Virus record (IMG/VR): IMGVR_UViG_3300027621_000003
Location: 186,001 to 250,000 of that record
Reading direction: 5' to 3' (one strand)
Length of the DNA stretch: 64,000 bases
The position numbers and the translations under genes were made by a program. Position 1 is the first letter of the stretch, and each line of letters opens with the position of its first letter. Positions 1-62,277 of the stretch are shown one piece after another. The notes under the pieces are model-generated. The model worked only from the letters and a program-made list of their open reading frames with translations, did not search any database and was not told where the DNA came from.

Positions 1-61
1 AGTAATCTTTTACAGAATTTTTTGATTCTTCCCTTAAGACCCTTTTGATTAGTTCCTTCAT
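1..61 (-). CDS. Hypothetical protein, runs off the window edge (MKELIKRVLREESK..., leader type B)
   Basis: Hand-translated. ATG at 61 is preceded by TATTTAT (66-72). N-terminus matches the MKDLIRKILxEE leader. Confidence 0.65.
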   Translation of the reverse strand, partial: MKELIKRVLREESKNSVKDY

Positions 62-74
62 ATCAATAAATACC

Positions 75-248
75 TTACATTACAAAACTATCTTCCAATA
101 ATTTAGTTACCCGTTTAATATGTCCCAAATGAACACCCCTATCTCCACCCATACGTTCCCTCATTTTCTTTTCAACATACATCTTCTCAATTTTGTCTGT
201 ATATACACGATACTCCGACATCATCTGAATTACGGTCTTTGTTTCCAT
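75..248 (-). CDS. Small hypothetical protein, 57 aa (METKTVIQMM...), absent from the ORF track
   Basis: Hand-translated open frame. TATCTTTG promoter element 4 nt upstream of the ATG. Confidence 0.6.
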   Translation of the reverse strand: METKTVIQMMSEYRVYTDKIEKMYVEKKMRERMGGDRGVHLGHIKRVTKLLEDSFVM

Positions 249-278
249 ATTACAAAGATACTAAATTAATGGGAAATA

Positions 279-305
279 AAAAACCCCTCGGTAATGGAGG
301 GGTTG
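279..305 (-). terminator. Intrinsic terminator
   Basis: ACCCCTC/GAGGGGT hairpin followed by a T-run on the minus strand. Related copies at ~682-707 and ~1627-1652. Confidence 0.6.
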
Positions 306-578
306 TTAACAATCTTCTTGGGAATTAATATAATATTGAATGATATAATCTTTTAGGTTTTGTTTTACAAAATCAATAACCTCTTCAGGTTGAATCCTTT
401 TAATACCCTCTAAATCTAAAAAGGTTTCCAATTCATAAATTACCCCAATATAAAAATAAGATTCATTTGAATAATCACAGGGGTACATATTATCCAATAC
501 AACATCCAATACTTTTTTAATATAATAAAACCTTCTTCTTAATGACGTGTTCTGTTCCTCAGTGATAATGATTTTCAT
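306..578 (-). CDS. Hypothetical phage protein, leader type A (MKIIITEEQ)
   Basis: ORF track; TATTTAT at 584-590. Confidence 0.75.
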   Translation of the reverse strand: MKIIITEEQNTSLRRRFYYIKKVLDVVLDNMYPCDYSNESYFYIGVIYELETFLDLEGIKRIQPEEVIDFVKQNLKDYIIQYYINSQEDC

Positions 579-610
579 ATTCCATAAATATACGGGAGGG
601 TAAAATAGGA

Positions 611-671
611 AAATTTTCCCAAAAATTCTATTTCACATATAGGGTATCTTCATAAGAAGGGGGGTCATGTT
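611..671. repeat. ~60-bp intergenic direct repeat, copy 1
   Basis: aaattttcc(c)aaaaattctatttcacatataggg..ta(t/c)cttcataagaaggggggtcatgtt also occurs at 1483-1544. Confidence 0.85.
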
Positions 672-728
672 TATAGGAAATAAAAAACCCCTCTGTTGGG
701 AGGGGTTCCAAGTATTTTTTTAAATGTA

Positions 729-1427
729 TTACCCACAAGGTACTACACTATCTTTAACCGTACTGGCAAACCAGTTAATTTGTAATGTATCATCTTTACG
801 TTGAATTATTTTATCAAAAGGAATTTTTACACAAACGTTATAAAGAAACTTTTGTTGAGGATATTTTTCGGTGCCTGCTTCATAAGAGTCCACATCATAA
901 TACTCTATTGATTCTGCTTTGATAATAATACCATCTTTGTCTTTACGGATAACTTTAGCACCCTCGATGTCTACGAACAACTCTCTTTTATCTCCCATTG
1001 TACTTGAATAAGTATATGACCTACCAATAATCATTTGTCTATTAGTGATAAGACGAATTACCGTACCAGGATTGTACATTGAATTTTGTTTCTGAGACTC
1101 ATCTTCTTGTTGATTAACCAATTTCATTATCAAATTATAATCAATATGATATTCATTCTGTAACCATTGGTCCAAGTTTTGACCATCTTGAACACCAAAT
1201 GCTTTTTTAACCCCTTCCCAATCCTGCTTGTTATTAATTCTGTTTACTATAGTTTGTTGAATGTTTTTTGCGGCGTCGCTTGTAACATTTAACCCCGTCA
1301 TCAATTCTTTGAAATAATCAGCAATTTCTTTGTAGTCTTGTGGGGTAAGTTTTTTGGCTTGTTCACTAATTACTCTTCTAACAATTCTTGTTAAATCTGA
1401 TTCTGTTAATCTTATAATTTTTTTCAT
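729..1427 (-). CDS. Hypothetical phage protein, leader type A (MKKIIRLTESDL)
   Basis: ORF track; TATTTAT at 1445-1451. Confidence 0.8.
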   Translation of the reverse strand: MKKIIRLTESDLTRIVRRVISEQAKKLTPQDYKEIADYFKELMTGLNVTSDAAKNIQQTIVNRINNKQDWEGVKKAFGVQDGQNLDQWLQNEYHIDYNLIMKLVNQQEDESQKQNSMYNPGTVIRLITNRQMIIGRSYTYSSTMGDKRELFVDIEGAKVIRKDKDGIIIKAESIEYYDVDSYEAGTEKYPQQKFLYNVCVKIPFDKIIQRKDDTLQINWFASTVKDSVVPCG

Positions 1428-1482
1428 ATTAATTTTCTTTAGTTATAAATATATTAAAAAGAGAAAAGGAGTATTTTTCCCA

Positions 1483-1544
1483 AAATTTTCCAAAAATTCT
1501 ATTTCACATATAGGGGGTACCTTCATAAGAAGGGGGGTCATGTT
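1483..1544. repeat. ~60-bp intergenic direct repeat, copy 2
   Basis: Near-identical to 611-671. Confidence 0.85.
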
Positions 1545-1669
1545 CCCGAACGGTATTTTTTATAACCATATGTCCCCCACCCATATAATATATTCCCGAA
1601 CGGGAAACAATTCAGGGATGGGCAATAAAAAACCCCTCTTTATGGGAGGGGGTCTTTAAATTAGTTTTA

Positions 1670-2029
1670 TTAATTATCAGGAGTAATCGGCATCGGTAAA
1701 TCAATTCCGATTTTTTTATCAGGAAGTACCTCACCCACCTTACTAAAGAATTTAGATGATGCCTTTTGAAAGTCTTGGTCATATACTTGAGCCAATATCT
1801 TCCCTGTTGTAATGTCAGTTAATTTAACGTAGGTTGCAAATACGTCTTTCCAAACACAAACCATGTATGGGGTTTTAGTCCCCGTCCCACCTGTTCCTGT
1901 ATTACTATTACATAAAGGATTCTCAGATGTTCCTTGTTGTTTTTGAGGTGTAGACTGTTCCACTAAGTATCTACCCTCTAATCTCTTGTTTGCGTCTTCC
2001 ATAGAAGACAATTTTCTATATGTACTCAT
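1670..2029 (-). CDS. Hypothetical phage protein
   Basis: ORF track; co-oriented with neighbours and followed by a terminator. Confidence 0.7.
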   Translation of the reverse strand: MSTYRKLSSMEDANKRLEGRYLVEQSTPQKQQGTSENPLCNSNTGTGGTGTKTPYMVCVWKDVFATYVKLTDITTGKILAQVYDQDFQKASSKFFSKVGEVLPDKKIGIDLPMPITPDN

Positions 2030-2041
2030 ATTTTTTTATTA

Positions 2042-2428
2042 TTACCAAGTTCTACATGCCCAATATCTTGGTTTCCATCTTGGACCAGGAGTATCACAAT
2101 TATGTCTTGCTCTAAAGTTCTTTCTTCTTTCAGGATTATTCTTTTTAATCCTCATTATTTTACCTTTGGCTGATTTTCCACCAAAACCAAAGTTTACCTT
2201 AACAACCTTACCTTTATCGTTCTTAACATATACTTTGGACTTTTTAATGTCACCCTGCATTATCTTACCCAACTGAACTTTTCTTCCCTGATATTCTGCT
2301 TCGGTTAATAAATCACCAATAACAAAATTGGTCTCTTCTACCGAACCATATCCATCTTCATATAAAAATGAATTCTCATTTTCTAATACTAATCTTTTAT
2401 ACTGAGACTCACTAATGATTATTTCCAT
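2042..2428 (-). CDS. Hypothetical protein, leader type A plus a basic RRKNFRARHNCD...RYWACRTW module seen in T4-like phages
   Basis: Start corrected to ATG 2428 (TATTTAT at 2434-2440); motif recognition. Confidence 0.75.
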   Translation of the reverse strand: MEIIISESQYKRLVLENENSFLYEDGYGSVEETNFVIGDLLTEAEYQGRKVQLGKIMQGDIKKSKVYVKNDKGKVVKVNFGFGGKSAKGKIMRIKKNNPERRKNFRARHNCDTPGPRWKPRYWACRTW

Positions 2429-2717
2429 ATTCAATAAATACCTCTTTCCCTAAAAAATTTCCAGAAAATTTCATCGTTAGTATTGTACCCCCAAAACCAC
2501 CTGTCAGAATGTCATATAGGGGGGGATACGGGAGGGGGGACCCCCACCATGGGGGGTGTGCCGTACTACAGGGGGGGAGTATAGTGTGGATAACTTATGT
2601 CCCCCTCCCCATGTGTCATAGTGTCATGTGGATAAGTAATGTCCCCGACTGATAAGGAGGTGGATAACTCCCCCCCTAAAAAAAAGGTGGGGGTTTGGTA
2701 GTGTCAAATAGATTACC

Positions 2718-2725
2718 TATCTTTG
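2718..2725 (+). promoter_or_regulatory. Bacteroidota-type -7 promoter element TATCTTTG
   Basis: Matches TAnnTTTG. TGTCA lies 16 nt upstream, the same spacing as for the copy at 2847-2854. Confidence 0.6.
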
Positions 2726-2858
2726 TATTATGATTCAGTTGTATACTGAACTTGGGCGTGGGGGCTTTCAGTGGTCACGGGAGAGTAGACTCCAACCTGC
2801 CTTATATTTTTTTTATAAGGTATTAGGAAATGTCAAAGGTATGTTGTACCTTTGTATT

Positions 2859-3236
2859 ATGATGAAGTTAATGGAATCCCCCACTCAGATTAAAAGACTT
2901 AATAAGATTATGAAGGATAGGATTATTACCTGTGGTGTTGTATCCTATTACTATGAGAACCTTAAGGGTTACTACTCCCTTCATGCTAACAAGGGGGACA
3001 ATTATACAACCCCCCATTTATACCTTAAGTTTAATATCACTGAGTGTACGGGTAAAAGACAATATGGTGATAAAGGAACATACCCCATCTTTAGGGGTCA
3101 TCGTAGAGTTAGGGGTATTAACTCTTCCATCATATATAACATTACCCAAGACGGTGTTAAACTATTCCTTAAACACTTTGGGGTTAAGTACTATGAACTT
3201 GGTAAGACTATGTTTGTTTGGCCCATTCAGAAATAG
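2859..3236 (+). CDS. Hypothetical protein (basic)
   Basis: Start corrected to ATG 2859, 4 nt after TACCTTTG (2847-2854). Confidence 0.6.
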   Translation: MMKLMESPTQIKRLNKIMKDRIITCGVVSYYYENLKGYYSLHANKGDNYTTPHLYLKFNITECTGKRQYGDKGTYPIFRGHRRVRGINSSIIYNITQDGVKLFLKHFGVKYYELGKTMFVWPIQK

Positions 3237-3582
3237 TCTCATAGGCTATTGATGATAGAGTTGTTCTTGTAATGTTGAAATCCCCCTCGTTAAGATGGAA
3301 GTGTTTGTGAAGTAATTCATGTAATGGTCTTAAGTCACAGTCCACCATCATCCATACATTCTGACTGAGGGGTTTATTTACAAATCCTTTCTTACCCTTC
3401 TCGAACCATACTATTGCCTCAGGTAATACATTCCCCCTATTTGGAACAAACCTAAGTATAATCCCCTTGGAACTTTCATCTACTTGGGGGGTATAATACT
3501 TCTGTACAATTAATCTTATGTTATGGTCCGTAACATTGGATGGTTCCATCTGTCTTTCGTATATCGGTTGGTCTTCACTCAT
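3208..3582 (-). CDS. Hypothetical protein
   Basis: Start corrected to MSEDQ at 3582; TATTTAT at 3590-3596. Confidence 0.6.
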   Translation of the reverse strand: MSEDQPIYERQMEPSNVTDHNIRLIVQKYYTPQVDESSKGIILRFVPNRGNVLPEAIVWFEKGKKGFVNKPLSQNVWMMVDCDLRPLHELLHKHFHLNEGDFNITRTTLSSIAYETISEWAKQT

Positions 3583-4272
3583 ATTGTTCATAAATATATA
3601 CTTATCCACACTTTTGTCCATACCTGACACCCTGTCAGTTCATAAAAAAATATGGGTTTGTGGATAACTTTGGGGGTAAAAATTTGGAATTGTCAAAATG
3701 TCAGTCCCCTCTTTCGCATGGGGATAATGCCTTCACAAGGTTTTAGTTTCCCCCACTTTCTCCCACAGGTGTATATTACCATAGTGTTATTCCCCCTGAC
3801 GCTATTGTAAGGACCAATTTATCCCCTCTGTTGACCCCTACAGAACCACTTTTTTCTATAGTGTTAAACCCCAGAGAATAATAGTTGTTATGGTCTACGA
3901 GGGCGGGAGACCCTTTAGGGTCCTTTAATCCCCCTTCAACGAGGGATGAAGTCCTTTTTTAAGATGACAACTAATGGACAACTTAAGTGGGTAATCTATT
4001 CCTGTCCCCTTAGTTCTATGGATATTATATATGGTGGTAAAAAGTGGGACATTATGTTTTGTATCTCATTCATCAGGTGAAACCTGACATTTACGATACA
4101 ACTAATCAGTCCCCCACTATTATCTATTCTATATGACATTACATATAATTGGTCGTAGACCAATACTTTTATATGTCATTACATATACGAAGATAACATA
4201 TCACCATCTCATTGTATCCATCTCCTTTAGTGGGGGACAAACTATAAGTGGGGGGTTCTTATTGTGGGGGAA

Positions 4273-4725
4273 TTACTTTTCCGTAATGGCCGTTACGGTA
4301 ATCGGTGTTACCATAGGTTCTAAGAAATTACAGAGGTCAGTAAGATATTTCATACACTCAGGGTCTTTCATACTACAATCTATAAGTTCTATCCTCTTAG
4401 GGTCTTCTAAGTACCATAGAGCAAGTTTGATTGACTTAACCTTAGTATCATATACATCACCGAACTCATGGTCATCATTATACCATCCTGTTTGGGTTTT
4501 TTGTTTAGTAAACTCTATAGAGAAGTTTAGGTTTGAACCATCGGTATAATGTTCAGGAACGTAATGAATATATACACCATTATCTTCTAATGTCTTATAT
4601 GTGTTTAATGTTACATCACCTATTAATTCCATAATCTGTCTTGTAAGATGACCTGCAGTTTTATAACCATCTAAATTCCATTGTATAATAAGATGTTCTA
4701 TTGTTGAATGTAATTCTTTATCCAT
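4273..4725 (-). CDS. Hypothetical protein
   Basis: ORF track; first ATG (MDKELH) at 4725. Confidence 0.6.
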   Translation of the reverse strand: MDKELHSTIEHLIIQWNLDGYKTAGHLTRQIMELIGDVTLNTYKTLEDNGVYIHYVPEHYTDGSNLNFSIEFTKQKTQTGWYNDDHEFGDVYDTKVKSIKLALWYLEDPKRIELIDCSMKDPECMKYLTDLCNFLEPMVTPITVTAITEK

Positions 4726-4938
4726 AGTGTTAATAATAATATATTCCCCCTGTTTAATCAAATCATATACGCATTTATCCGTATATATACGAATGAATAT
4801 CCGATTGGTTTATAGTTGTTAGTTTACTATAAACAGAATGAAGTAAAATTATGAATGAATGTGTGGAACGGAGTGAAACACCATGAGTGAGTAAATTTAC
4901 TTTATGATGTATCAAATCTTAATGATGCCGGGAACTGA

Positions 4939-5562
4939 TTATTCCCCCACCCTTTTTTCTTCTTTTTTTGGAACAATTACCGCATATTGTCCATTCCATT
5001 CAGATGCTGGTGGAATGTTTGGATTACCAGGGAATGCGGTTAACAATGAATAAACATTTCCGTTTTTAATACCTTGTAATATTTCATCATCTTCTTTAAC
5101 ATCATCAGGAAGATATTCTGGATTTGATTTTCTTATAATTAATGTTAATGTATCGGTCTTAAAATTATCTGAAGATTTGCTAGTATAAATTAAAGGGACT
5201 TCAATATCATTACCTCGTTCTTTTTTTGTTGTGGTAGTTTCTTTTGCGTCTTCATAATTTATTGCTTCATCATATGGTTTAACCAAATCATAACCAATAT
5301 TAGGAACGTTAACTTCAAACGCTCCACCTTCACCCAATTCATTATTTTCCAATGCCATATTAATAAAATTATTAATATCTTCATCAGTTATTCCTTCTTT
5401 AAAGGTTGAACCTGTTCCAAATTGATTGTGAGTTTTTATATGGTTTTTTGTATAATCGGCAACTAAAACAACATTTCCATCGTTTGATTGAATTTTATCT
5501 GTGGCTTCAATGATTAATCCCATCATTGATTTAATTCTGTCTATGTTTTCTTGCAATTTCAT
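4939..5562 (-). CDS. Leader type C protein with a toxin-RNase-like domain
   Basis: MKLQENIDRIKSMMGL leader; HIKTHN..GSTF ... LLTAFPG pattern; TATTTAT at 5568-5574. Confidence 0.55.
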   Translation of the reverse strand: MKLQENIDRIKSMMGLIIEATDKIQSNDGNVVLVADYTKNHIKTHNQFGTGSTFKEGITDEDINNFINMALENNELGEGGAFEVNVPNIGYDLVKPYDEAINYEDAKETTTTKKERGNDIEVPLIYTSKSSDNFKTDTLTLIIRKSNPEYLPDDVKEDDEILQGIKNGNVYSLLTAFPGNPNIPPASEWNGQYAVIVPKKEEKRVGE

Positions 5563-5624
5563 AATTAATAAATATGACACCCTACCCCTTTTTATTATAT
5601 TTACTTTTACCTATATTTATAGTT

Positions 5625-5930
5625 ATGGAAGCATCCACCGAAATGATTAAAAGAGTATTAGAACACTTGGTTTCACCTAAGTGGAATGGTATTGTGGAAT
5701 ATGAGATTGAACCTTCTACACACGATGATACAGGTGTAGAATACTACATGATAGATGTTATATTTGATATTGCTGGATATTGGGCGAAATATCACGCAGG
5801 TGAATATGATTATTCAGACCAAATGGATGCAGAGATTGAAGCTGATGTTAGAAATGCGGTGAAGTATTTGGGTATTAACACAACATTTGTAACAATATAT
5901 GTTAGGGATGAAGATGGAAATAATAAATAG
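5625..5930 (+). CDS. Hypothetical acidic protein, paralog of 10096-10368
   Basis: Start corrected (TATTTAT at 5614-5620). Shares the LxxLVxPK...(K/R)YL(G/S)I pattern. Confidence 0.7.
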   Translation: MEASTEMIKRVLEHLVSPKWNGIVEYEIEPSTHDDTGVEYYMIDVIFDIAGYWAKYHAGEYDYSDQMDAEIEADVRNAVKYLGINTTFVTIYVRDEDGNNK

Positions 5931-5938
5931 AATTACTA

Positions 5939-6277
5939 TTATGGACAAACATATTGATGCATAAGACGTAATCTTTCACCATATTTGTCTTTAGCATATT
6001 TCTCCATCATCCTATACGCTTTACCCCACTCAGGTGAACTATCATCCACACTTTCAAAGTAATCCCAATATATTGTGTTTAATGTTTTAGAAATTGTTGC
6101 CTCAATAAATTCATCCTCATCAATTTTACATATAGAATATTGGACATTGACTTCATCTGCAGATAGAAAGATTAAATCATCAACATTACTTATTCTTCTT
6201 TGTACGGCAGCCAAAAGATTGGACTCATTTAATCCCATCATCTCTTGTATTCTATTTACCTGTTCCTGTAAGTTCAT
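5939..6277 (-). CDS. Hypothetical protein, leader type C (MNLQEQVNRIQEMMGL)
   Basis: ORF track. Confidence 0.75.
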   Translation of the reverse strand: MNLQEQVNRIQEMMGLNESNLLAAVQRRISNVDDLIFLSADEVNVQYSICKIDEDEFIEATISKTLNTIYWDYFESVDDSSPEWGKAYRMMEKYAKDKYGERLRLMHQYVCP

Positions 6278-6753: not shown

Positions 6754-6754
6754 A

Positions 6755-7534: not shown

Positions 7535-7536
7535 AA

Positions 7537-8070: not shown

Positions 8071-8071
8071 A

Positions 8072-8437: not shown

Positions 8438-8451
8438 ATCTATAAATATAA

Positions 8452-9348: not shown

Positions 9349-9391
9349 ACTTTATTATTTTTTATATAGTTACAAAGATACGAAAAACTCC

Positions 9392-9955: not shown

Positions 9956-10095
9956 TACTATTAAATATCATTACTTACCCCATTTTGTTTTGAATATCAT
10001 ATAATAAAGTACAAGTGGTAATGCTAATACCAACCATAACAGACAATTTAATCTTTCTTTATTTGACATTATCTTAATATACAATATTTATCAGT

Positions 10096-10478: not shown

Positions 10479-10913
10479 TTAGATGTAAATATTATATTTG
10501 GATTCTATTGTGTAGTAATAATGATTTTGTTGCAGGTATTGAAGTGTTGGATGTGGGTCAAAGTGCGGTAAAAATGTTCCATTTTCATTTTTAAAGATGC
10601 AACAATGTGGTTTTCCTCGTTGGGATGCACCTCTCATAATTACATATTCTTCTTTTGTCTCATCATCTAATGAATGTTTTTTAATACATTTTTGATGTTT
10701 TAAGTCTAACCATAAATTCATAACTTTAAACCACGCATGGTCCTCAGTTGTTTTGTCTTTTTCATCTAACCCATAAAATGTGTAGACATTAGGAACTTCA
10801 TCAATTGGTTCATCCAACAATGAAGCAACACAGGCAATTAAACAATTACCATATGTAAGCCTTTTACCATCTGAATAAAACAGAGAGTATTTTGTTTGGT
10901 TTGTAAGTTTCAT
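10479..10913 (-). CDS. Hypothetical protein, possible papain-like Cys/His/Asp fold
   Basis: GNCLIACVASLL...HCC...FDPHP pattern. Confidence 0.5.
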   Translation of the reverse strand: MKLTNQTKYSLFYSDGKRLTYGNCLIACVASLLDEPIDEVPNVYTFYGLDEKDKTTEDHAWFKVMNLWLDLKHQKCIKKHSLDDETKEEYVIMRGASQRGKPHCCIFKNENGTFLPHFDPHPTLQYLQQNHYYYTIESKYNIYI

Positions 10914-11833
10914 TATTTATTTTTTTTCATAAATTTGTAATCAAAGTCAACATCTAAGTTGAATGATTTTACAAATGGTCGTATTTTTTTAAATACTGAG
11001 GGATTAAAATCATCTTCCCAAATATAATCAGGTAAATCAAAATATCCAACATCTTCCCATGTATCATCCTCTTCATTACCTACCATTAATCTATTGATTA
11101 ATAAATAAATTGTACCTTCATATTGAATTGGTTCATCATCTTCTTGGACATCCGTTTTCCAAAAATGAGTACTTTCTTCATCAAAACTATATTCCATATA
11201 AACATCCACTCGTTCATTATCATCATATGGTGTTGAAAACCAAGTTTCAAACGTTGAGTTATCAGGAATGTATTTTTTTAATAATGAATTAAACATTTGA
11301 GTTGCTTTACCGTCAATATTATCTCTATGTGATTCTTGAATAAATTCTTTTGAGAATTTCTCTTTACTGTAATCAGTAAAATATCTAATCATTTTATAGT
11401 AATCAGATAATAAATCTAATTTATCAAATTCATTTTCTACTTGAGATTGAGATAAAATACTATTATTATCACCATACATCATAATTCCTGAAGGTGCTGC
11501 GTATTTACCACCCAAGTAATTATCATCTGGTTTATTAATGAATAACCCATATTTGGTATTACCTAATCTTTGAGCAATCTCAGGGTTTTTAATTACAAGA
11601 TATGCCAATGAACCCATTTCATTATGTTTATTAAACATGGTGTCATCACATCTAGTTGTTGTACACCATTTAGCGTTGGCTCCATATTTTTTACTTGCTT
11701 CAAATGTCAGTGGAACAACCAATTCAAAATTATTATTTTTGAATAGTTTAATGTACTCATCAGAACTTACTTTAAATTTTTCAGTAATCTGATGAGTCTC
11801 TTCTTTTAATACTTGAAGAATTAGTTGTTTCAT
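10913..11833 (-). CDS. Leader type B protein with a YGxxxKWC domain
   Basis: Start corrected (TATTTAT at 11839-11845); VVPLTFEASKKYGANAKWCTT. Confidence 0.7.
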   Translation of the reverse strand: MKQLILQVLKEETHQITEKFKVSSDEYIKLFKNNNFELVVPLTFEASKKYGANAKWCTTTRCDDTMFNKHNEMGSLAYLVIKNPEIAQRLGNTKYGLFINKPDDNYLGGKYAAPSGIMMYGDNNSILSQSQVENEFDKLDLLSDYYKMIRYFTDYSKEKFSKEFIQESHRDNIDGKATQMFNSLLKKYIPDNSTFETWFSTPYDDNERVDVYMEYSFDEESTHFWKTDVQEDDEPIQYEGTIYLLINRLMVGNEEDDTWEDVGYFDLPDYIWEDDFNPSVFKKIRPFVKSFNLDVDFDYKFMKKNK

Positions 11834-11914
11834 TAGTAATAAATAGTTGGTAAATAAAAAAACCCTCACGATTAGTGAGAGTTCATTATGTTATATGTTA
11901 TTGTTTGATTAAGA

Positions 11915-18499: not shown

Positions 18500-18612
18500 G
18501 TTTTTATTTATAAATAGTTTTTATTTTTTTAAAATTTTTGGAATACGGAATGTTCTCTTACCCATTCTATACTTTTTTGGATTAATGTTAAAAATTGTTT
18601 TAATTTCATTTT

Positions 18613-27506: not shown

Positions 27507-27530
27507 ATTAATATAAATACTTTAAAAGTA

Positions 27531-28476: not shown

Positions 28477-28513
28477 AATACAAAGATACAATTAGTTTTT
28501 GAATTACCAAACT

Positions 28514-29726: not shown

Positions 29727-29774
29727 GAAACAAAGATACAAAAAATATTTCTAATTGACAAGGTATTTATTGAT

Positions 29775-34663: not shown

Positions 34664-34705
34664 AGTACAAAGATACAATTAATTTTTGATTATTTCATTT
34701 TTATT

Positions 34706-35251: not shown

Positions 35252-35274
35252 AATTCAAATATAAAAATAAAAAT

Positions 35275-36497: not shown

Positions 36498-36570
36498 ACA
36501 TCAAAGATACAAATAAAAAGTAACATAAAAAAGAACCCCCCAACTTTTTATTGTTAGGGGAGTTACTTAA

Positions 36571-37308: not shown

Positions 37309-37348
37309 ATAACAAAGATATGGAATAGTTTTAAAACCACCAAATATA

Positions 37349-37384: not shown

Positions 37385-38247
37385 CGGACATAGGATACTA
37401 TCCTATGTGGGGTTTTGGCTAAAACGATGAGATTACTCGTTTAGTTGACCTGTCTTTTGTAGAGATTATACCCGACTAAGGTTTCCTCTCGTATCCACTA
37501 ATGTTGCCATCAGTATCAAGTCATCACCGATTGTTTACGACAATCACACGTTTCGGTCAAACTTACTCAACTATTACTTGCCTCTATAGAATCTTGCGAA
37601 CTCTCTAAACCCGTGCCCAGGTACTAGGACTTTCTTAGTCAAAACTGAAGGACTTGGGGTCCTGTCAATTTCCTTGTTGGTATTTCTACCCAAGGAATTA
37701 GGTGACTTTCAGTTTAACCGCTCAGAGACTTTTCCTTTTCTGTAGTTTATTTTTTCATAATAAATCAACATAGTGAGTGTGATGAAAGATGAGCTCTGAG
37801 GTGGATAGCTTCTCTTTTGAAGAAGTAAATACCACTCACCTTTCTGTAATCCGCCAAGACTACGACTTATCTTGATATCGTTGTGTCACCACTTGGATAC
37901 CTGTGATAAATTGGTGACCTAGCCCTACATCCACTTGGCGGCGGAGTCGAACCATTCCCTTTACCTTTTCCTATTGATGTCTCCATCTCAACCCTGACAC
38001 CTCACGTGGTCAAAATAAATAACTTCTCTCAGCTGTTGCCCATAAGAAATCATTCGTAGGTAATTTGTTTAGTTGTGAGCCACTTTCGTGACACCGAGAT
38101 ATTTGTACCGTTGAGTACTTTCTCCCCTATAGTCCCGTTACCGGGGTTATCTTAATCGACGCTAAACCGCCGAATACAAACCAAACTTCAATTTAAGGGG
38201 GTGAAGTTGGCGTTTCAAAGAACGTTTTGAGATGTTATTCTCAATTG
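37350..38247 (-). ncRNA. Large structured non-coding RNA (~880 nt), GOLLD-like candidate
   Basis: ORF-free and GC-richer than its flanks. TAACTTTG promoter at 38253-38260, boxA-like GTTCTTTGAAA at 38213-38223, many GNRA-capped hairpins, long-range helices and a terminator. Confidence 0.75.
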
Positions 38248-38252: not shown

Positions 38253-38284
38253 CAAAGTTAAGACTATTTTTTCAAACTGTCAAA
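38253..38284 (-). promoter_or_regulatory. Bacteroidota sigma promoter for the ncRNA
   Basis: Minus strand TTTG-N20-TAACTTTG. Confidence 0.7.
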
Positions 38285-38783: not shown

Positions 38784-38802
38784 ATCTTATATTTATCACT
38801 AT

Positions 38803-39147: not shown

Positions 39148-39168
39148 TTTTAGCCATACCTTTGGGTT

Positions 39169-42620: not shown

Positions 42621-42670
42621 ATTATATTTCTATATAAATATCAAGTAATATAAAAAATAAACCCCCACTA

Positions 42671-47055: not shown

Positions 47056-48840
47056 TTAATGAAAGTCGCCATCATAGAAAATGTAGTACGTTTCACCTTC
47101 AAAAGATACACTTTCTTCACTTCCGTCATAGTTATTCAAAATTGTACCATATCCATCAGCATCAACAACCGCTTGAGCAAAATCATCTTCATCAATAAAA
47201 CCATTACTTGTTGCCCATTCACTAAAGTCATTACCACCCAAATAATTTTCATAAAAATCTTTAGCGTCATATCTATGTTCAGATATTTTATCTGCAACTA
47301 TAGAATCTAACTTATACTCATCATACTCACCATCTGGGTCATCTTCAATTTCTTCAATTTCATTATTTGCCTCATCAATCTCATCACCCATTCTGTCATA
47401 TTCATCACTATAATCTTCATCTTCATCATCTAAACTATCCCTTTCAGACTCTAAATTTAAAACCATTTGTTTTAATTCTACAATTCTGGCTTCTTGACTA
47501 CGGCTCAATTCTTTATCACTATCATCTAAATAAACTTCAGGATTATTGTAAACATCCTCTTCAAAAAAATCTTTTAAATATACCCTAAAACTATCATCAT
47601 CAAAATGTTCCATTACAAATGATTCATTATAACCATCATATCCTACATCATCCAACATATCTTTTACATATCTCACGGCTTCTCTTTCAGTATCATCAGA
47701 ATCACCAACTTTCCATCTACCTTGAAATTCTGTTGTTGTAAATTCTTTTAAAACATAATCACCAGTAGGTAACATATTATACACATCCATCTTGGCGTCT
47801 AATTCGGTTAACTCATCTTCCAACTCACTTATTTCATCCAACAAATCTCCTCTAACTTCTTCGTCATTATCATATTCCGCTTGAAGTCTGGTAATTTCAT
47901 TTTCAATTCTTGCAATTTCACTTTTATCTTCAGGTGTTTTTTCTTCAATTGTTCCTTCACTAATTAAAAAGTTAAAAAGAGCGTGAGCACAAGAACCCAT
48001 ATCACCTTGAGATAAATTATCTAAACTCCACTCATCATCTTCTCTTCTTTGATTAGCAGATTCAATTAAACCATTTTCAACTCTTTGTTGTTCTACTCTT
48101 GCTAATCTTTTTCTTTCAATCGCAAGCGTTTCTTTATCACCCCAAATTTCAAGTTCCTTGGCATATTTCTCTCTGATATATAAATCAATGTATTGTTTTA
48201 TACGAGCAAGTTCATTTGTTCCCATAATCCAACCACTGGTGAATTTATCGTCAGGAGCATCAAAATAAGATTCATCACCATCAAACTTTTTCAATAACGC
48301 AACTTTGTAGAATCTATCAGATGTTGCTTTTGTTTTATCTAAGATATAAAACAATTTCCCATCCTTCATATAGTTGTTAAAGTGTGTATTGTCAGCACTT
48401 GATGCTGTACACCATTTGGTACCAGCACCATAATAACAAGACGCTGTGGTTGTAAGTGGTGCGACAACGGTAAATTGGTCATTTTCAAAAACAATGTCCG
48501 CACCTTCAATAGATTTTACCGTTCTTCTTATTCTAGTTTCATATTCTTCAATCGCAGAATATAACTCAGCAAATGTTTTGTATTGATTAATATCTTTGAT
48601 TTGTAAATTGGGACCGATAGATACAAACTTCTTTAAAGTGTCTTTTATTTTTTCATCTAATAATCCACCAGCAATTGTTGGAGGTAATGCTCTACCTAAG
48701 AAAGTCAAAAACTTTGAACCATTTGGAATTTCATTAACCATCTTAATAATGGCATCTAACTTTTCAGGAGAAAACTTTTTCCCGTAAGTTGTTTTGAAGT
48801 CTTCTTCTCTTCCCTCTAATAACAAATTAATAAATTTCAT
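47056..48840 (-). CDS. Acidic protein with a YGxxxKWC domain and coiled coils
   Basis: ASCYYGAGTKWCTA; TATTTAT at 48854-48860. Confidence 0.75.
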   Translation of the reverse strand: MKFINLLLEGREEDFKTTYGKKFSPEKLDAIIKMVNEIPNGSKFLTFLGRALPPTIAGGLLDEKIKDTLKKFVSIGPNLQIKDINQYKTFAELYSAIEEYETRIRRTVKSIEGADIVFENDQFTVVAPLTTTASCYYGAGTKWCTASSADNTHFNNYMKDGKLFYILDKTKATSDRFYKVALLKKFDGDESYFDAPDDKFTSGWIMGTNELARIKQYIDLYIREKYAKELEIWGDKETLAIERKRLARVEQQRVENGLIESANQRREDDEWSLDNLSQGDMGSCAHALFNFLISEGTIEEKTPEDKSEIARIENEITRLQAEYDNDEEVRGDLLDEISELEDELTELDAKMDVYNMLPTGDYVLKEFTTTEFQGRWKVGDSDDTEREAVRYVKDMLDDVGYDGYNESFVMEHFDDDSFRVYLKDFFEEDVYNNPEVYLDDSDKELSRSQEARIVELKQMVLNLESERDSLDDEDEDYSDEYDRMGDEIDEANNEIEEIEDDPDGEYDEYKLDSIVADKISEHRYDAKDFYENYLGGNDFSEWATSNGFIDEDDFAQAVVDADGYGTILNNYDGSEESVSFEGETYYIFYDGDFH

Positions 48841-48949
48841 TATTCAATTTACTATAAATATTAATAAACTTGTAATATACACACAAACTTAATAAACAGA
48901 TTGTATTAAACAACTATTTATGTATAATAAACCTTAATAATATAAAACC

Positions 48950-49099: not shown

Positions 49100-49153
49100 T
49101 ACTCTTTAATATGGGAAGTGAAAACTTCCCATTTTTTTTGTATTTATATTACT

Positions 49154-53854: not shown

Positions 53855-53876
53855 ATTCACAAAGATAATAAAAAAA

Positions 53877-55525: not shown

Positions 55526-55569
55526 TTCGGTATCTTTTGTCATATAAATATCTATAAATTGTGGTTTTT

Positions 55570-56409: not shown

Positions 56410-56482
56410 ACAACAAATATAAGAAAGTTTTACCTAAAAAGCAAATGTTTACAAGAAATATTTATTGTAATATATTAGAACT

Positions 56483-59125: not shown

Positions 59126-59294
59126 TCTGTTTTTTGTTTTCAAGGATTTCACCTCTTAGTTGTTGCAAAAGCGCTTTCATATCTTGAGAAAGTTTACGAG
59201 CTCTTGTACCCGCACTTTTGTTACCTTTGAAGAATTTTGTAGTATCTACAGAAAGTTCTTCCATTAAGACTTTAAGTTGTTCTAATGTTTCCAT
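59118..59294 (-). CDS. Histone H1-like (Hc1 family) protein, 58 aa, absent from the ORF track
   Basis: Hand-translated: METLEQLK...KFFKGNKSAGTRARKLSQDMK..LR.EI. Confidence 0.8.
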   Translation of the reverse strand: METLEQLKVLMEELSVDTTKFFKGNKSAGTRARKLSQDMKALLQQLRGEILENKKQND

Positions 59295-59360
59295 GTTTTT
59301 TTTTAAATTTAATTAAATCATAATTTTTTATTGCTGGTAGTAAATAAAATAAAGGTTTTT

Positions 59361-59828
59361 TTATACTAAGTTTTTATTTAAAAGTTTGTAAATGTCTGTT
59401 ACCATATCCAAATCTGATTTAGTATAAACTTTTGTTTCGTCAAATAACTCATCAAAAAATTTATTAATGTTTTCAGATATTGTTTTATTATCAGGGTTAT
59501 AAAATAAATCCTCATAAAAATTCTGATAATACTCTTTATGGTCACCATTAGTTTTGAACCTAATATTTTCTTTAGCAAAATTTTCCACTGTCTTGGACCA
59601 GCACCAATCAAAGTGTGAATTTTTTTCTTCTTGGGATAATAAAACTCTGGTTTCAGTTGCATCTTCGGGTTCATTACCCAAATAGGTTTCTTTTATTAAA
59701 GAATCCAAACTAAACGTAAAATCTGCAAATAATTCACGTTTCTCATAAATCATATTGTTCATGTTGAACCAAACTTCAACATCTTCCCGAGTTACAGGCT
59801 TCATCATCCAAGAATAAAAATTCTCCAT
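59361..59828 (-). CDS. Hypothetical protein
   Basis: TYLG...HFDWCW..TVENF..E.I.F. Confidence 0.7.
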   Translation of the reverse strand: MENFYSWMMKPVTREDVEVWFNMNNMIYEKRELFADFTFSLDSLIKETYLGNEPEDATETRVLLSQEEKNSHFDWCWSKTVENFAKENIRFKTNGDHKEYYQNFYEDLFYNPDNKTISENINKFFDELFDETKVYTKSDLDMVTDIYKLLNKNLV

Positions 59829-59876
59829 AGAAAGGTATCTATGGAGAATATAAGTATAATCTTTATTAAATGTATA

Positions 59877-61343
59877 TTATTGAGTTTTTTTCTTGTAACC
59901 CAAAAGATGTTTCATTTTGTCCATCTCTTCGTTAATCAATTTACTCTTTTTGTTATCAGATTCGCCAAGTTTATTGAAAAGGCTATCCAAAGAATTATTG
60001 TGAGTTTCTTCACCCGCTTGGTCAACTGGTTGTGGTACTCTATTATAAGACCTATTCTTTTCTGCTCCGTATAAGTTTTTCTTTCTCTTAGCATTAATCT
60101 TCTTACCTAAACCTGTATCAATAGCGTTTCCACCAGCTCCGTTTCCTGTCTTAGAAGAACCTTCAATGTTCGCCTTTAACCAATCTTCATTTGGTTTAAT
60201 CTCATCGTATTGTAAGTTTTCCATACCAGGTGAATAAGCAAAGTTCTCAATGTATTCCTCAACAGCACTTGATGGTGTGTATGCCTTCTTAGTCATTTTA
60301 GCTAACTCACCATTACCTTTTGGAAATTGTGTTGGGTTTGCATCGTACTTACCTTTAGAAGCATCTTTTAAATAAGTCTGCATTTTTTTAGTAACAGATT
60401 TAATATAATCATCATTTTCAGTCTTTGATGATTTTAATGATTTGTTAGTTACAGGAACCGTAGTCTGTTCGTTAACAATTTTTTCAATCAAATCAATAAG
60501 TTCATCCTCTGTAAGTTGAATTGATTCTTTTACAGGATATGTTTTACCATCAACCTCAAAAGATTTATCACCACTTTTTTTAGCGTTTGCTAAAGCTCCC
60601 GAAAATTCATTACCCTCTTCCATTTCCCCATCTTCTGAGTCTTTTGGGTCTTTGTCAAATCTACCTTGACCAGGTCCAACATAGTGCCAACCTCTAATAT
60701 CGTCATAATCATATCCTATATTTCCTAAATATGGATTTTCTTTTTTATCTTTTTCACGAGCAACTTCAGGGTCTTCCTTTTTACCAAACATTTTCTTGAA
60801 CATGTTTTCATCAACTTCACCCTCACTGAATTCTTTAGATACTTTTCTTTCGTATTTGTCACCAACATTTTTTACTTTGTGTGGTGTTTTAATTTGTTTT
60901 TCGTAATCAGCATTTGGTAACATATCATCATAACTTAAATCATCATCAGTCGCTGTATCACCAAATGAATATTCATTGATGTCTTCTTTAACGAATTTAG
61001 TACCTCTATATAAAGGTTCGTTCTTAGATAATTTGTTTGCCTCAGACCATCCTTGACCATCACTTTTATCATCCCAATTTTCATCAACATCACCTGAAAC
61101 AATCTCACCATGTTCAAATCCTGCTTGTGTTTTTGATTTTTGTTTCTTACTTCTTAATTTTTCAAAATCAGCTGCGGTTATTTTACCTTTTGGTTCTGCA
61201 ACATCAATTTTTTTCTGACCACCATGAAGTGATTCTGTAATGCCATTTTTAGCTTTGTTAAGTATATTATCAGCTTTAAAACTAATTGCTTCAGCTAAAA
61301 CTTTTGATACTATTTCATCAATATGTGTTTCAATGTTTCTCAT
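59877..61343 (-). CDS. Large low-complexity modular protein (putative virion internal protein)
   Basis: LHGGQKKIDVA..GKIT.ADF, EGNEFSGAL..AK..FEVDGKTY and internal LTEDEL..LIEKIVNEQ modules. Confidence 0.7.
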   Translation of the reverse strand: MRNIETHIDEIVSKVLAEAISFKADNILNKAKNGITESLHGGQKKIDVAEPKGKITAADFEKLRSKKQKSKTQAGFEHGEIVSGDVDENWDDKSDGQGWSEANKLSKNEPLYRGTKFVKEDINEYSFGDTATDDDLSYDDMLPNADYEKQIKTPHKVKNVGDKYERKVSKEFSEGEVDENMFKKMFGKKEDPEVAREKDKKENPYLGNIGYDYDDIRGWHYVGPGQGRFDKDPKDSEDGEMEEGNEFSGALANAKKSGDKSFEVDGKTYPVKESIQLTEDELIDLIEKIVNEQTTVPVTNKSLKSSKTENDDYIKSVTKKMQTYLKDASKGKYDANPTQFPKGNGELAKMTKKAYTPSSAVEEYIENFAYSPGMENLQYDEIKPNEDWLKANIEGSSKTGNGAGGNAIDTGLGKKINAKRKKNLYGAEKNRSYNRVPQPVDQAGEETHNNSLDSLFNKLGESDNKKSKLINEEMDKMKHLLGYKKKTQ

Positions 61344-61368
61344 TGTAATTTTATTTATAAATACTTTA

Positions 61369-62019
61369 TTATTTTTGTTTAATTGTCTTTAACTCTAATT
61401 CGTGTTGAATTATTGCTTTGATTACGTTTTCATGAATTCCCATTTTTTTAGATAAATTAGTAATTGATTCTTTAACTAACTTATTTTCATATAATTTTAG
61501 CGCATTAATATCGCCTTGATTACAATATGGAAACGTTTGGCATTTCTTTTTTATTTGTACAAATTTACCACCAGGTATTTGAGTTTTAGACGCTCCTCTC
61601 CAATTCTTTTTATTTGGTGCCACCCAACCTGGTGTTGAGTATTGTCCTGATGATGAAGAACTTGTTGCTTCAGTTGTTTCACCACCCTCTATACTTTCCT
61701 GAACTTTAGTAACAGGGTCCTTTGGAGTTGCAAGAGAGAATAAAGGTGCTGAGTATTGTCCTGAAGATGCTGTGCTAGTGGCTTCAACGGCTTCTTTTTT
61801 CTTTTTTCCTTGACAATGAGCCTTTTGACTAAACCCTTTTGGATTACTGCAGTCAATACTACTTTTATATTTTTGACTCCATTTTTCGTCAATTTCAGTT
61901 TCTTCTCCTACAGATTTTTTAAAATTATTAAGTTGCTTTGAAGTCTCTGATGTTTTATCAGAATTTCTTCTTAGTGAAGATTCAACACTACTTACCAATT
62001 TTTTAGTCATATTATCCAT
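61369..62019 (-). CDS. Modular protein with a KWSQKYKxSIDCSNPKGFSQKAHC module
   Basis: Module recognised from T4-like phages; repeated EATSxxSSGQYSxP. Confidence 0.7.
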   Translation of the reverse strand: MDNMTKKLVSSVESSLRRNSDKTSETSKQLNNFKKSVGEETEIDEKWSQKYKSSIDCSNPKGFSQKAHCQGKKKKEAVEATSTASSGQYSAPLFSLATPKDPVTKVQESIEGGETTEATSSSSSGQYSTPGWVAPNKKNWRGASKTQIPGGKFVQIKKKCQTFPYCNQGDINALKLYENKLVKESITNLSKKMGIHENVIKAIIQHELELKTIKQK

Positions 62020-62264
62020 TACGCATTTTTTAATCTACCTTGCCACATACTTCTTTGTTGGTACATCATACCATAAAATTCTGTAAACATTTTTATGACC
62101 AAGTCTTTAATTTCTTTCTCACTCTTACCTCGTTTCATATCCTTTATGACAATATCCAACAATTTATCCTCAAATTGTTTTACTGTATTTGTCCCAATAA
62201 AATCTTTAATTTCTTTACGAACTAAAGTTTCAATTTCTTTTTTTTCTGGTGCGGTTAGTGCCAT
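62019..62264 (-). CDS. Hypothetical protein
   Basis: Start corrected (TATTTAT at 62269-62275). Confidence 0.65.
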   Translation of the reverse strand: MALTAPEKKEIETLVRKEIKDFIGTNTVKQFEDKLLDIVIKDMKRGKSEKEIKDLVIKMFTEFYGMMYQQRSMWQGRLKNA

Positions 62265-62277
62265 GTTTATAAATATC

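What the first reader, a model, noticed from the sequence alone, without database searches (positions are those of the whole stretch)
61..62275. TATTTAT motif just upstream of about 20 start codons: candidate late promoter that is the reverse complement of the T4 late promoter
Seen: sense-strand TATTTAT(A) lies mostly 4-8 nt, and sometimes ~10-28 nt, before the ATG of genes starting at 61, 578, 1427, 2428, 3582, 5562, 5625(+), 8437, 10096(+), 11833, 18499, 27506, 29775(+), 38803(+), 42620, 48840, 48950(+), 49154(+), 55525, 56483(+), 61343 and 62264. It follows gene orientation on both strands and marks mainly leader-bearing genes, not the enzyme genes carrying TAnnTTTG. Known: the T4 gp55 late promoter is TATAAATA on the sense strand. 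Inference: a phage-specific late promoter producing leaderless or very short-leader mRNAs.
Basis: partly seen in the sequence, partly recalled or inferred. Interest (0 to 1): 0.6.

Follow-up and report, generated by a model that had tools for sequence, protein, structure and literature searches.

The report
Phage TATTTAT promoter, often leaderless
A strictly conserved 7-base signal, TATTTAT, in front of about a hundred genes of a 295-kb freshwater phage is most likely the phage's own promoter, read with a phage-encoded sigma factor. It is often placed so close to the start codon that the mRNA would have no leader, which is rare in the host phylum.

Summary
The window is part of a 294,914-bp T4-like jumbo phage. 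TATTTAT is the most enriched 7-mer upstream of its genes: 96 of 344 genes against 16 in shuffles. In 48 genes it sits exactly 4-6 nt before the ATG, against 0.9 expected.

The motif is orientation-specific, allows almost no mismatch and has no -35 partner. It stays invariant upstream of orthologous genes in dozens of diverged relatives, while its distance to the ATG varies from 4 to about 20 nt. That fits a promoter, not a translation signal.

It heads all identified virion and lysis genes, but also operons with DNA polymerase and ribonucleotide reductase, so "late" is only partly supported.

A second class, the Bacteroidota host-type promoter (TTG-N19-TAnnTTTG), sits exactly 4 nt before the ATG of 21 enzyme or small genes. 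That geometry puts +1 on the A of ATG, so both classes predict leaderless mRNAs.

The genome encodes a gp55-related sigma factor outside the window. Its family co-occurs with TATTTAT in Flavobacterium phage immuto and Microcystis phage Mel-JY01.

The "reverse complement of T4" resemblance is superficial. No transcription start was mapped. I rate this a new variant of a known kind.

The parts
66..72 (-). TATTTAT (L-class promoter element), 4 nt before ATG at 61
584..590 (-). TATTTAT, 5 nt before ATG at 578
1445..1451 (-). TATTTAT, 17 nt before ATG at 1427 (leadered)
2434..2440 (-). TATTTAT, 5 nt before ATG at 2428
3590..3596 (-). TATTTAT, 7 nt before ATG at 3582
5568..5574 (-). TATTTAT, 5 nt before ATG at 5562; back-to-back with the next site
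5614..5620 (+). TATTTAT, 4 nt before ATG at 5625 (divergent partner)
8442..8448 (-). TATTTAT, 4 nt before ATG at 8437
10085..10091 (+). TATTTAT, 4 nt before ATG at 10096
11839..11845 (-). TATTTAT, 5 nt before ATG at 11833; preceded by a hairpin plus T-run
18510..18516 (-). TATTTAT, 10 nt before ATG at 18499
27513..27519 (-). TATTTAT, 6 nt before ATG at 27506; preceded by a hairpin plus T-run
29764..29770 (+). TATTTAT, 4 nt before ATG at 29775
38790..38796 (+). TATTTAT, 6 nt before ATG at 38803
42634..42640 (-). TATTTAT, 13 nt before ATG at 42620; preceded by a hairpin plus T-run
48854..48860 (-). TATTTAT, 13 nt before ATG at 48840 (594-aa protein of a paralogous family)
48915..48921 (+). TATTTAT, 28 nt before ATG at 48950 (49-aa ORF, doubtful gene)
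49141..49147 (+). TATTTAT, 6 nt before ATG at 49154; preceded by a hairpin plus T-run
55544..55550 (-). TATTTAT, abutting ATG at 55543 and 18 nt before ATG at 55525 (the likelier start)
56459..56465 (+). TATTTAT, 17 nt before ATG at 56483 (very short ORF, not in my gene calls)
61357..61363 (-). TATTTAT, 13 nt before ATG at 61343
62269..62275 (-). TATTTAT, 4 nt before ATG at 62264
253..260 (-). Companion class: host-type -7 box TATCTTTG, 4 nt before ATG at 248
28481..28488 (-). Host-type -7 box, 4 nt before ATG at 28476
29731..29738 (-). Host-type -7 box, 4 nt before ATG at 29726
34668..34675 (-). Host-type -7 box, 4 nt before ATG at 34663 (T4 Rnl1-type RNA ligase)
35256..35263 (-). Host-type -7 box, 4 nt before ATG at 35251
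36502..36509 (-). Host-type -7 box, 4 nt before ATG at 36497
37313..37320 (-). Host-type -7 box, 4 nt before ATG at 37308 (T5orf172 protein)
39157..39164 (+). Host-type -7 box, 4 nt before ATG at 39169
53860..53867 (-). Host-type -7 box, 5 nt before ATG at 53854
56414..56421 (-). Host-type -7 box, 4 nt before ATG at 56409 (Dam-type methyltransferase)

Best explanation
TATTTAT (consensus R-TATTTAT-W) is the -10-type core of the phage's own main promoter class. It has no -35 partner. It is most likely read by host RNA polymerase core carrying a phage-encoded sigma factor. The best candidate is the gp55-related two-domain sigma at G000 96505-97242, which lies outside the window.

Transcription would start about 5 nt after the motif. 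Where the ATG lies 4-6 nt downstream (48 genes genome-wide, 14 with a spacer of 7 nt or less in the window) the mRNA starts at or within 1-2 nt of the AUG and is leaderless. Elsewhere the same element gives leaders of 10-45 nt.

The class drives all recognisable virion and lysis genes and many others. A separate host-type class (TTG-N19-TAnnTTTG) drives enzyme genes, tRNAs, a sigmaA-like gene and probably the GOLLD RNA, and is very often in the same leaderless geometry.

Shown: enrichment, strictness, orientation, conservation, geometry, the sigma-factor fold, and co-occurrence of motif and sigma family. Inferred: promoter activity, which sigma reads the motif, the start-site position, and timing.
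For: Statistics.

No upstream element in 97 aligned sites, whereas the host-type class shows TTG 20 nt upstream of its box.

Phylogenetic footprint: an exact TATTTAT stands upstream of the orthologues of three structural-region genes in dozens of IMG/VR relatives. N-terminal protein identity there falls to 27-50% and the flanks are otherwise diverged. The spacer to the ATG varies from 4 to about 20 nt among orthologues of one gene. 883 kb of related loci show the same spacer peak at 4-6 nt.

Terminator-like hairpins lie within 60 nt upstream of 15 of 97 motif sites, against 5 of 208 genes without either motif.

Geometry: in Flavobacterium johnsoniae the start site lies 4-5 nt after the -7 box, whose register is T-12 A-11 ... 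G-5 (PMC6847099). Here 21 host-type boxes stand exactly 4 nt before an ATG, so +1 falls on the A. TATTTAT occupies the same register with spacers of 4-6 nt.

Genes driven: tail sheath, two baseplate wedge proteins, the major-head operon, portal, large terminase, a 1314-aa virion protein and two endolysin-like proteins.

Sigma candidate:
- PHROG 'late sigma transcription factor' (phrog_234), E 8e-5 on the genome; 13 of 54 family members hit it.
- hhalign against T4 gp55: probability 64%, E 6.6e-5, collinear over 114 columns.
- The family profile picks only gene 55 among the T4 ORFs of bases 28-46 kb.
- AlphaFold model with pLDDT 91. All top 50 structural matches are sigma factors. Residues 23-128 match sigma region 2 at Z 9.4-9.6, rmsd 2.7 A over 93 residues.

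Co-occurrence: the same sigma family is encoded by Flavobacterium phage immuto (E 2e-36) and Microcystis phage Mel-JY01 (E 6e-31). In both, TATTTAT is the top upstream 7-mer of its composition and precedes terminase, portal, sheath, tail and baseplate genes. Immuto has no homologue of the other, sigmaA-like, gene.

No RNA polymerase beta or beta-prime domains were found in the genome.
Against: - No 5' end was mapped. The four metatranscriptome runs are assembled contigs of 90-580 nt that cannot show starts.
- The gp55-like gene lies inside an operon that is itself headed by TATTTAT. No conserved host-type promoter lies within 1.5 kb upstream of it in 65 relatives, so how its expression begins is unexplained.
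- Sequence similarity to gp55 is weak (PDB profile E 0.078). The protein carries a sigma-4-like domain that gp55 lacks, yet no -35 element is seen.
- No gp45-type clamp was detected.
- A fourth phage with a homologue of this sigma (LR756508) shows no enrichment in the 50 kb sampled: 2 of 18 copies.
- The motif also heads operons with DNA polymerase and ribonucleotide reductase, so the class is not purely late.
Confidence: 0.65

Rival explanations
1. The reader of TATTTAT is the other phage sigma. This is the 266-aa SigA/RpoD-like protein at G000 251215-252015, made early from a host-type promoter. The gp55-like protein would then have another role.
For: It has clear sigma regions 2 and 4 and matches SigA/RpoD/RpoS chains at E 1e-44. 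Its two-gene operon is headed by TTTG-N20-TATCTTTG. That gives a simple cascade from host sigma to phage sigma to TATTTAT, with no problem of how expression begins.
Against: Flavobacterium phage immuto uses TATTTAT before its structural genes but encodes no homologue of this protein. A region-4-bearing primary-like sigma would be expected to need a -35/-33 element, and none is seen.
Confidence: 0.15
2. TATTTAT is a variant -7/-10 box read by a host sigma factor (the primary sigma or an alternative one), not by a phage factor.
For: It shares T-12, A-11 and T-8 with TAnnTTTG when aligned at spacer 5. Flavobacteria use several -7 box variants and alternative sigma motifs (PMC9723704).
Against: It lacks the nearly invariant T-7 and G-5 of the host box: G follows the motif in 7 of 97 sites. 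It also lacks the TTG upstream element. The same 7-mer precedes structural genes in a cyanobacterial phage (Mel-JY01) whose host has quite different promoters, and it tracks a phage-encoded sigma family.
Confidence: 0.1
3. The motif acts at the RNA level, as a translation-initiation enhancer or an RNA-processing site just upstream of the AUG, rather than as a promoter.
For: It stands at a tight distance from the ATG in 48 genes. Bacteroidota lack Shine-Dalgarno sites and use other upstream cues (PMC6847099).
Against: Among orthologues the motif is kept while its distance to the ATG changes from 4 to about 20 nt, and in leadered genes it lies 10-45 nt away. It often follows terminators directly. 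The bona fide host promoter box occupies exactly the same position before other genes. The motif is U-rich, whereas the known Bacteroidota cues are A residues.
Confidence: 0.05
4. The functional strand is the opposite one: a true T4-type TATAAATA late promoter that fires away from the gene.
For: TATTTATA is the reverse complement of TATAAATA, and a gp55 relative is encoded.
Against: Only 7 bases are conserved; the eighth is A in about half of the sites. The orientation follows the downstream gene (96 sense, 35 antisense, the latter largely from divergent gene pairs). The sharp 4-6 nt spacing to the downstream ATG has no meaning for a promoter that fires upstream.
Confidence: 0.02

Closest known systems
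T4 late promoters (TATAAATA) read by gp55, with gp33 and the gp45 clamp
   Same: A single, very strict AT-rich -10-type element with no -35 partner. It heads virion genes of a T4-like myovirus. A gp55-related sigma is encoded. About 5 nt separate the element from +1.
   Different: The sequence differs (TATTTAT, and not its complement in any functional sense). The candidate sigma has an extra sigma-4-like domain. No gp45 homologue was detected. Many transcripts would be leaderless. The class also covers replication-gene operons.
Bacteroidota primary-sigma promoter (-33 TTG / -7 TAnnTTTG)
   Same: The same register relative to the start site. The genome uses this class too (46 genes, tRNAs, probably GOLLD).
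   Different: TATTTAT lacks T-7, G-5 and the -33 element. In hosts, leaderless mRNAs make up only about 4-5.5% (PMC7366714, PMC9723704). Here 27 of 46 host-type promoters and 54 of 97 TATTTAT promoters stand 7 nt or less from the ATG.
'-10 region adjacent to the ORF' / leaderless expression in Deinococcus-Thermus (PMC12340547), and leaderless middle and late transcripts of Thermus phage phiYS40 (Sevostyanova et al. 2007, recalled from memory; paper not held)
   Same: A -10 box a few bases before the start codon gives 5'-AUG mRNAs. In phiYS40, a large phage uses this for most non-early genes.
   Different: The host phylum here is one in which leaderless mRNAs are rare. The motif and the sigma differ.
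Ma-LMM01 (Microcystis phage) late promoter WTNNANN16-22TATTMT (PMC5780444)
   Same: A TATT-type late -10 box in a freshwater T4-like phage.
   Different: It was attributed to host SigA with a -35 part, and that phage was reported to lack a phage sigma. Here no -35 is seen and a phage sigma family co-occurs with the motif.
PeSL (promoter-early stem-loop) cassettes of T4-type phages (recalled from memory)
   Same: Compact units of terminator hairpin, promoter and small ORF in a region of many small genes.
   Different: Those cassettes carry host sigma70 early promoters and leadered genes. Mobility of the units was not tested here.

Membership tests
T4-type late transcription system (gp55 late promoter) | A single -10-region element with no -35 element | tested here: met
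   Information content is about 0 at all positions upstream of the 7-mer in 97 aligned sites, apart from a purine at -1 and a weak W-tract.
T4-type late transcription system (gp55 late promoter) | Consensus TATAAATA on the non-template strand | tested here: not met
   The sense consensus is R-TATTTAT-W. Sense ATAAATA occurs before 35 genes against 96 for TATTTAT.
T4-type late transcription system (gp55 late promoter) | A gp55-family sigma is encoded | tested here: inconclusive
   phrog_234 at E 8e-5, with 13 of 54 family members hitting it. hhalign against gp55 gives probability 64%, E 6.6e-5. The PDB profile scores gp55 (7d7c_F) at E 0.078, below SigA region 2 at E 1e-3.
T4-type late transcription system (gp55 late promoter) | The sigma consists of a region-2-like domain only (no region 4) and is activated through gp33 and the gp45 clamp | tested here: not met
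   The model has a second, sigma-4-like helical domain (residues 155-245) that aligns with two-domain sigmas such as sigmaE. phrog_223 (gp45) found no match. gp33 was not searched.
T4-type late transcription system (gp55 late promoter) | Drives virion and lysis genes late in infection | tested here: inconclusive
   All recognised virion and lysis genes lie behind TATTTAT, but so do the DNA polymerase and ribonucleotide reductase operons. Timing cannot be tested with these tools.
Sigma-70 family (the candidate reader, G000 96505-97242) | Sigma region 2 fold | tested here: met
   The AlphaFold model has pLDDT 91. Residues 23-128 match RpoS region 2 (5h6x_A) at Z 9.6 and sigmaE region 2 bound to -10 DNA (4lup_C) at Z 9.4, both at rmsd 2.7 A over 93 residues. 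All top 50 matches are sigma factors. Pfam Sigma70_r2 scores only E 0.01.
Bacteroidota primary-sigma promoter | T-12 A-11 T-8 T-7 T-6 G-5 plus an upstream TTG | tested here: not met
   For TATTTAT sites there is A at the -7 register, G follows the motif in 7 of 97 sites, and no TTG is seen. The feature is met by the separate TAnnTTTG class.
Leaderless mRNA | The promoter -10 element ends 4-6 nt before the start codon | tested here: met
   48 TATTTAT sites at spacer 4-6 and 21 host-type boxes at spacer 4. The register is taken from PMC6847099.
Leaderless mRNA | The primary 5' end maps to the A of AUG | not testable with these tools
   Only Logan contigs of metatranscriptomes were available. Contigs cannot show starts.

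The most novel reading that the evidence does not exclude
A Bacteroidota jumbo phage, and its large freshwater clade, runs a largely leaderless gene-expression programme. Both its host-type early promoters and its own TATTTAT promoters are placed so that +1 is the A of AUG for about 80 genes. The TATTTAT class is read by a previously undescribed two-domain, gp55-related sigma family. That family and its 7-mer are shared by T4-like phages of hosts in different phyla (Bacteroidota and Cyanobacteria). Leaderless translation would then be a phage strategy in a phylum that lacks Shine-Dalgarno initiation.
Probability: 0.4. Interest if true: 0.75.

Novelty: new variant of a known kind. Interest (0 to 1): 0.62.

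Why it matters
If correct, this gives a ready-made promoter and sigma pair for a very abundant but uncultured clade of freshwater jumbo phages (more than 580 related IMG/VR contigs). It offers a rule for annotating their transcription units and true start codons.

It also gives a testable model of how T4-like phages of Bacteroidota, and apparently of Microcystis, switch transcription. The cultured Flavobacterium phage immuto and its host could serve for the tests.

The predicted mass use of leaderless mRNAs stands out, because only about 4-5% of host transcripts in this phylum are leaderless and Shine-Dalgarno pairing is not used. It bears on how phage messages compete for ribosomes there. The strict 7-mer could also serve as an orthogonal promoter part for Bacteroidota genetics.

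Tried and rejected
- Metatranscriptomes. Six RNA runs hold parts of window 1-6000. Four were laid on it (6,000 letters). They are assembled contigs of 90-580 nt at low depth, many from related strains, and give no start sites. One contig ran into an adapter near the 5' end of the gene at 1427, which I judged uninformative.
- An internal host-type promoter 398 nt upstream of the gp55-like gene. It is present in only 5-6 of 65 relatives, so it is probably chance.
No beta or beta-prime Pfam domains were found. No RNA-polymerase PHROG appeared among the 42 proteins of 500 aa or more. The T7-type search had no positive control, so it is uninformative.
- The gp45 clamp (phrog_223): no match.
- Direct sequence search of the candidate sigma against the PDB: nothing. 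The shallow 13-sequence alignment gave only 4.8% probability against gp55 and a poor model with pLDDT 64. The deep alignment was needed.
- Foldseek E-values for the good model were weak (0.04 or more), although nearly all hits were sigma factors.
- LR756508, a 484-kb phage with a homologue of the sigma: no TATTTAT enrichment in the 50 kb sampled.
- Literature. No paper in the held library describes TATTTAT as a phage promoter. The phiYS40 paper is not held.
- Alternative genetic codes were not invoked. Table 11 gives 94% coding density.

Full report
**Context.** The window is bases 186001-250000 of a single 294,914-bp viral contig with CheckV completeness 98%. GC content is 32% and most genes lie on the minus strand. 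PHROG scans find a T4-like structural set: tail sheath, baseplate wedge proteins, major head protein, portal and gp17-type large terminase. They also find a family B-type DNA polymerase, ribonucleotide reductase and a helicase. The nearest terminases belong to uncultured huge phages, Flavobacterium phage immuto and T4-like cyanophages, at 26-29% identity. The DNA is held by many freshwater and lake metagenomes. More than 580 IMG/VR contigs encode a major head protein that is 76-99% identical. The phage therefore belongs to a widespread freshwater jumbo-phage clade. The abundant TTG-N19-TAnnTTTG promoters argue for a Bacteroidota host; this is an inference. I called 344 genes with a simple codon-usage caller under table 11, which gives 94% coding density. 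Gene numbers below are mine.

**Observation.** Every one of the 22 listed sites carries sense-strand TATTTAT. Genome-wide, 61 of the 220 copies lie 3-10 nt before an ATG that opens a long ORF. Same-composition permutations give mostly 1-3%, and the reverse complement gives 8 of 220. The spacer peaks sharply at 4, 5 and 6 nt. In an unbiased ranking TATTTAT is the most enriched 7-mer in the 60 nt upstream of genes: 96 genes in sense orientation and 35 antisense. Dinucleotide-preserving shuffles of the same upstream windows give 16.1 +/- 3.8 genes. For spacer 4-6 they give 0.93 +/- 0.95 against 48 observed. The element is unusually strict, since no single-mismatch variant exceeds 4 occurrences at that position. 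Half of all copies lie in the 6.8% of the genome that is intergenic.

**Anatomy.** I aligned 97 sites, taking the motif inside or just before the upstream gap. The alignment shows a purine before the 7-mer, A or T after it, a weak A/T tract 13-17 nt upstream, and nothing resembling a -35 or -33 element. Spacers to the start codon form a peak at 4-6 nt plus a tail of 8-45 nt. The tail includes the tail sheath gene, several very large virion-type genes and the operon that ends in the major head gene. Terminator-like hairpins with T-runs lie within 60 nt upstream of 15 of 97 sites, against 5 of 208 genes that have neither motif. Typical units are therefore terminator, TATTTAT, 4-6 nt, ATG.

**A second class fixes the geometry.** Forty-six genes carry TAnnTTTG, mostly TATCTTTG, with a TTG 20 nt upstream. 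This is the Bacteroidota primary-sigma promoter. In 21 of them the box ends exactly 4 nt before the ATG. In Flavobacterium johnsoniae the transcription start lies 4-5 nt after this box, whose register is T-12 A-11 T-8 T-7 T-6 G-5 (PMC6847099). The A of these ATGs is therefore +1, and these are predicted leaderless mRNAs. TATTTAT sits in the same register: with a 5-nt spacer its T and A fall at -12 and -11. The 4-6 nt class is therefore also predicted to be leaderless. In hosts of this phylum only 3.7-5.5% of mRNAs are leaderless (PMC7366714; PMC9723704). Here 54 TATTTAT genes and 27 TAnnTTTG genes have a spacer of 7 nt or less. The host-type class heads enzyme genes: an M20 peptidase, an aminotransferase, a metallophosphatase, two RNA ligases, a Dam methylase, a T5orf172 protein and an ATP-dependent protease. 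It also heads tRNA genes.

**Promoter or translation signal.** In 80 related loci I located orthologues of three TATTTAT-headed genes near the major head gene. N-terminal protein identity there falls to 27-50% and the intergenic sequence is otherwise unalignable. Even so, an exact TATTTAT is present in nearly every orthologous upstream region. For one gene the spacer is 4 nt in this phage but 14-20 nt in most relatives, and the motif usually follows the upstream stop codon directly. Conservation of the 7-mer combined with freedom in its distance to the ATG fits a promoter. It does not fit a ribosome-positioning element. The related loci as a whole repeat the 4-6 nt spacer peak.

**Which polymerase reads it.** No beta or beta-prime domains were found, and no RNA-polymerase PHROG appeared among the large proteins. 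A host core polymerase with a phage sigma is therefore the economical model. Two sigma genes exist, both outside the window.
- The first, at G000 251215-252015, is a 266-aa SigA/RpoD-like protein with regions 2 and 4. It is expressed from a host-type promoter.
- The second, at G000 96505-97242, is a 245-aa protein that hits the PHROG for the T4 gp55 late sigma.
  - Its family has 1,086 representatives in the 1.84-billion-protein library.
  - A 54-sequence profile aligns collinearly with T4 gp55 (hhalign probability 64%, E 6.6e-5).
  - The profile's best PDB matches are SigA region 2, followed by an ECF sigma and gp55.
  - It picks only gene 55 among the T4 ORFs of bases 28-46 kb.
  - Thirteen of 54 members hit the gp55 PHROG, and no other family is hit by more than one member.
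  - The AlphaFold model (pLDDT 91) matches only sigma factors among its top 50 hits. Region 2 superposes at 2.7 A over 93 residues, and a second domain aligns with sigma region 4.

**Co-occurrence test.** Flavobacterium phage immuto, a cultured phage of a different genus, encodes this sigma family (E 2e-36) but has no homologue of the SigA-like protein. In immuto TATTTAT is again the top same-composition 7-mer upstream of ORFs: 30 of 104 copies, against a median of 4.8% for permutations. It precedes the annotated terminase, portal, tail sheath, tail completion, baseplate hub, tail spike and baseplate assembly genes. Microcystis phage Mel-JY01, which infects a cyanobacterium, also encodes the family (E 6e-31). 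It shows TATTTAT before terminase, the portal-like gene, tail tube and neighbouring genes, with Shine-Dalgarno-like leaders of 13-37 nt. A fourth phage with a homologue (LR756508) showed no enrichment in the 50 kb sampled, so the link is not universal, or the specificity has drifted there.

**Is it 'late'?** I assigned each gene to the nearest upstream promoter on its strand. This puts 220 genes behind TATTTAT, 74 behind the host-type box and 50 behind neither. All recognised virion and lysis genes are in the TATTTAT class. So are the operons with DNA polymerase, ribonucleotide reductase, PhoH, sugar enzymes and the gp55-like gene itself. The class is better described as the phage's own post-early promoter. 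The gp55-like gene has no conserved host-type promoter within 1.5 kb upstream, so how its expression begins remains unexplained.

**Comparison with T4.** What is shared: a strict -10-only element, a related sigma, virion genes as targets, and about 5 nt between the element and the start site. What differs: the sequence, the extra sigma-4-like domain, no detectable gp45, and the leaderless layout. The 'reverse complement' relation holds for only about half of the sites at the eighth base and has no mechanistic meaning for a strand-specific element. The held literature has no description of TATTTAT as a phage promoter. The closest printed case is the TATTMT late box of Ma-LMM01, which was attributed to host SigA (PMC5780444).

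**Limits.** Promoter activity, start-site position, timing and the identity of the sigma are all inferences. The RNA data available were assembled contigs and show only that parts of the region occur in RNA libraries. The gene starts are my own calls. The ORF-based tests do not depend on them.

Noticed in passing
window 37424-37844 (-), with a possible promoter at 38253-38260 (-): A full-length match to GOLLD RNA (Rfam RF02032, 309.6 bits, E 1e-87) lies in the 1-kb gap upstream of the gene at 37308. A host-type promoter (TTG-N20-TAACTTTG) lies about 410 nt upstream of the Rfam match. A start there would give an RNA of roughly 830 nt.
   Followed up: partly
G000 130.6-146.2 kb and 155.8 kb (outside the window; loci L009-L011): About 27 distinct tRNA genes cluster here, with two more tRNA-Ser genes further on. 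Several lie 9-16 nt behind host-type TAnnTTTG boxes, for example tRNA-Leu at 146111 behind the box ending at 146101.
   Followed up: partly
G000 251215-252536 (just beyond the window's 3' end): A phage-encoded SigA/RpoD-like sigma factor (266 aa, regions 2 and 4, E 1e-44 to SigA chains) sits in a two-gene operon behind a host-type promoter. Homologues occur in many unrelated phages (325 records).
   Followed up: partly
genome 138523(-), 151349(+), 238157(-) = window 52157, 260995(-): Four host-type boxes are each followed by the same words, TTTG-TATAACAA. Some have no ORF directly downstream. They may mark tRNA or small-RNA promoters or a shared 5' leader.
   Followed up: no
window 47059-48840 (-), 10913-11833 (-); G000 124625-126418, 134719-136278: A paralogous family of 300-600-aa proteins (phrog_17056 / phrog_28193, function unknown). 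Each copy is headed by its own TATTTAT.
   Followed up: no
window 48950 (+) and 56483 (+): Two very short ORFs both begin Met-Gly-Cys. Each lies 17-28 nt behind a TATTTAT in a divergent intergenic region.
   Followed up: no
loci L021-L100, upstream of orthologues of the gene before the major head gene (G000 about 108,700): In nearly all relatives a run of 5-7 T lies 12-14 nt upstream of TATTTAT at this one promoter. It may be an UP-like or bending element of the strongest structural promoter.
   Followed up: no
window 61-72, 2428-2440, 29764-29775: Three unrelated genes share an identical 14-nt stretch, AGG-TATTTAT-TGAT, directly before the ATG. This suggests copying of promoter cassettes.
   Followed up: no
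Flavobacterium phage immuto MW353177, about 74,990 and 76,170: In immuto's small-gene region, terminator T-runs are followed by TATATTTAG rather than TATTTAT or TAnnTTTG. This may be a further promoter variant in that phage.
   Followed up: no
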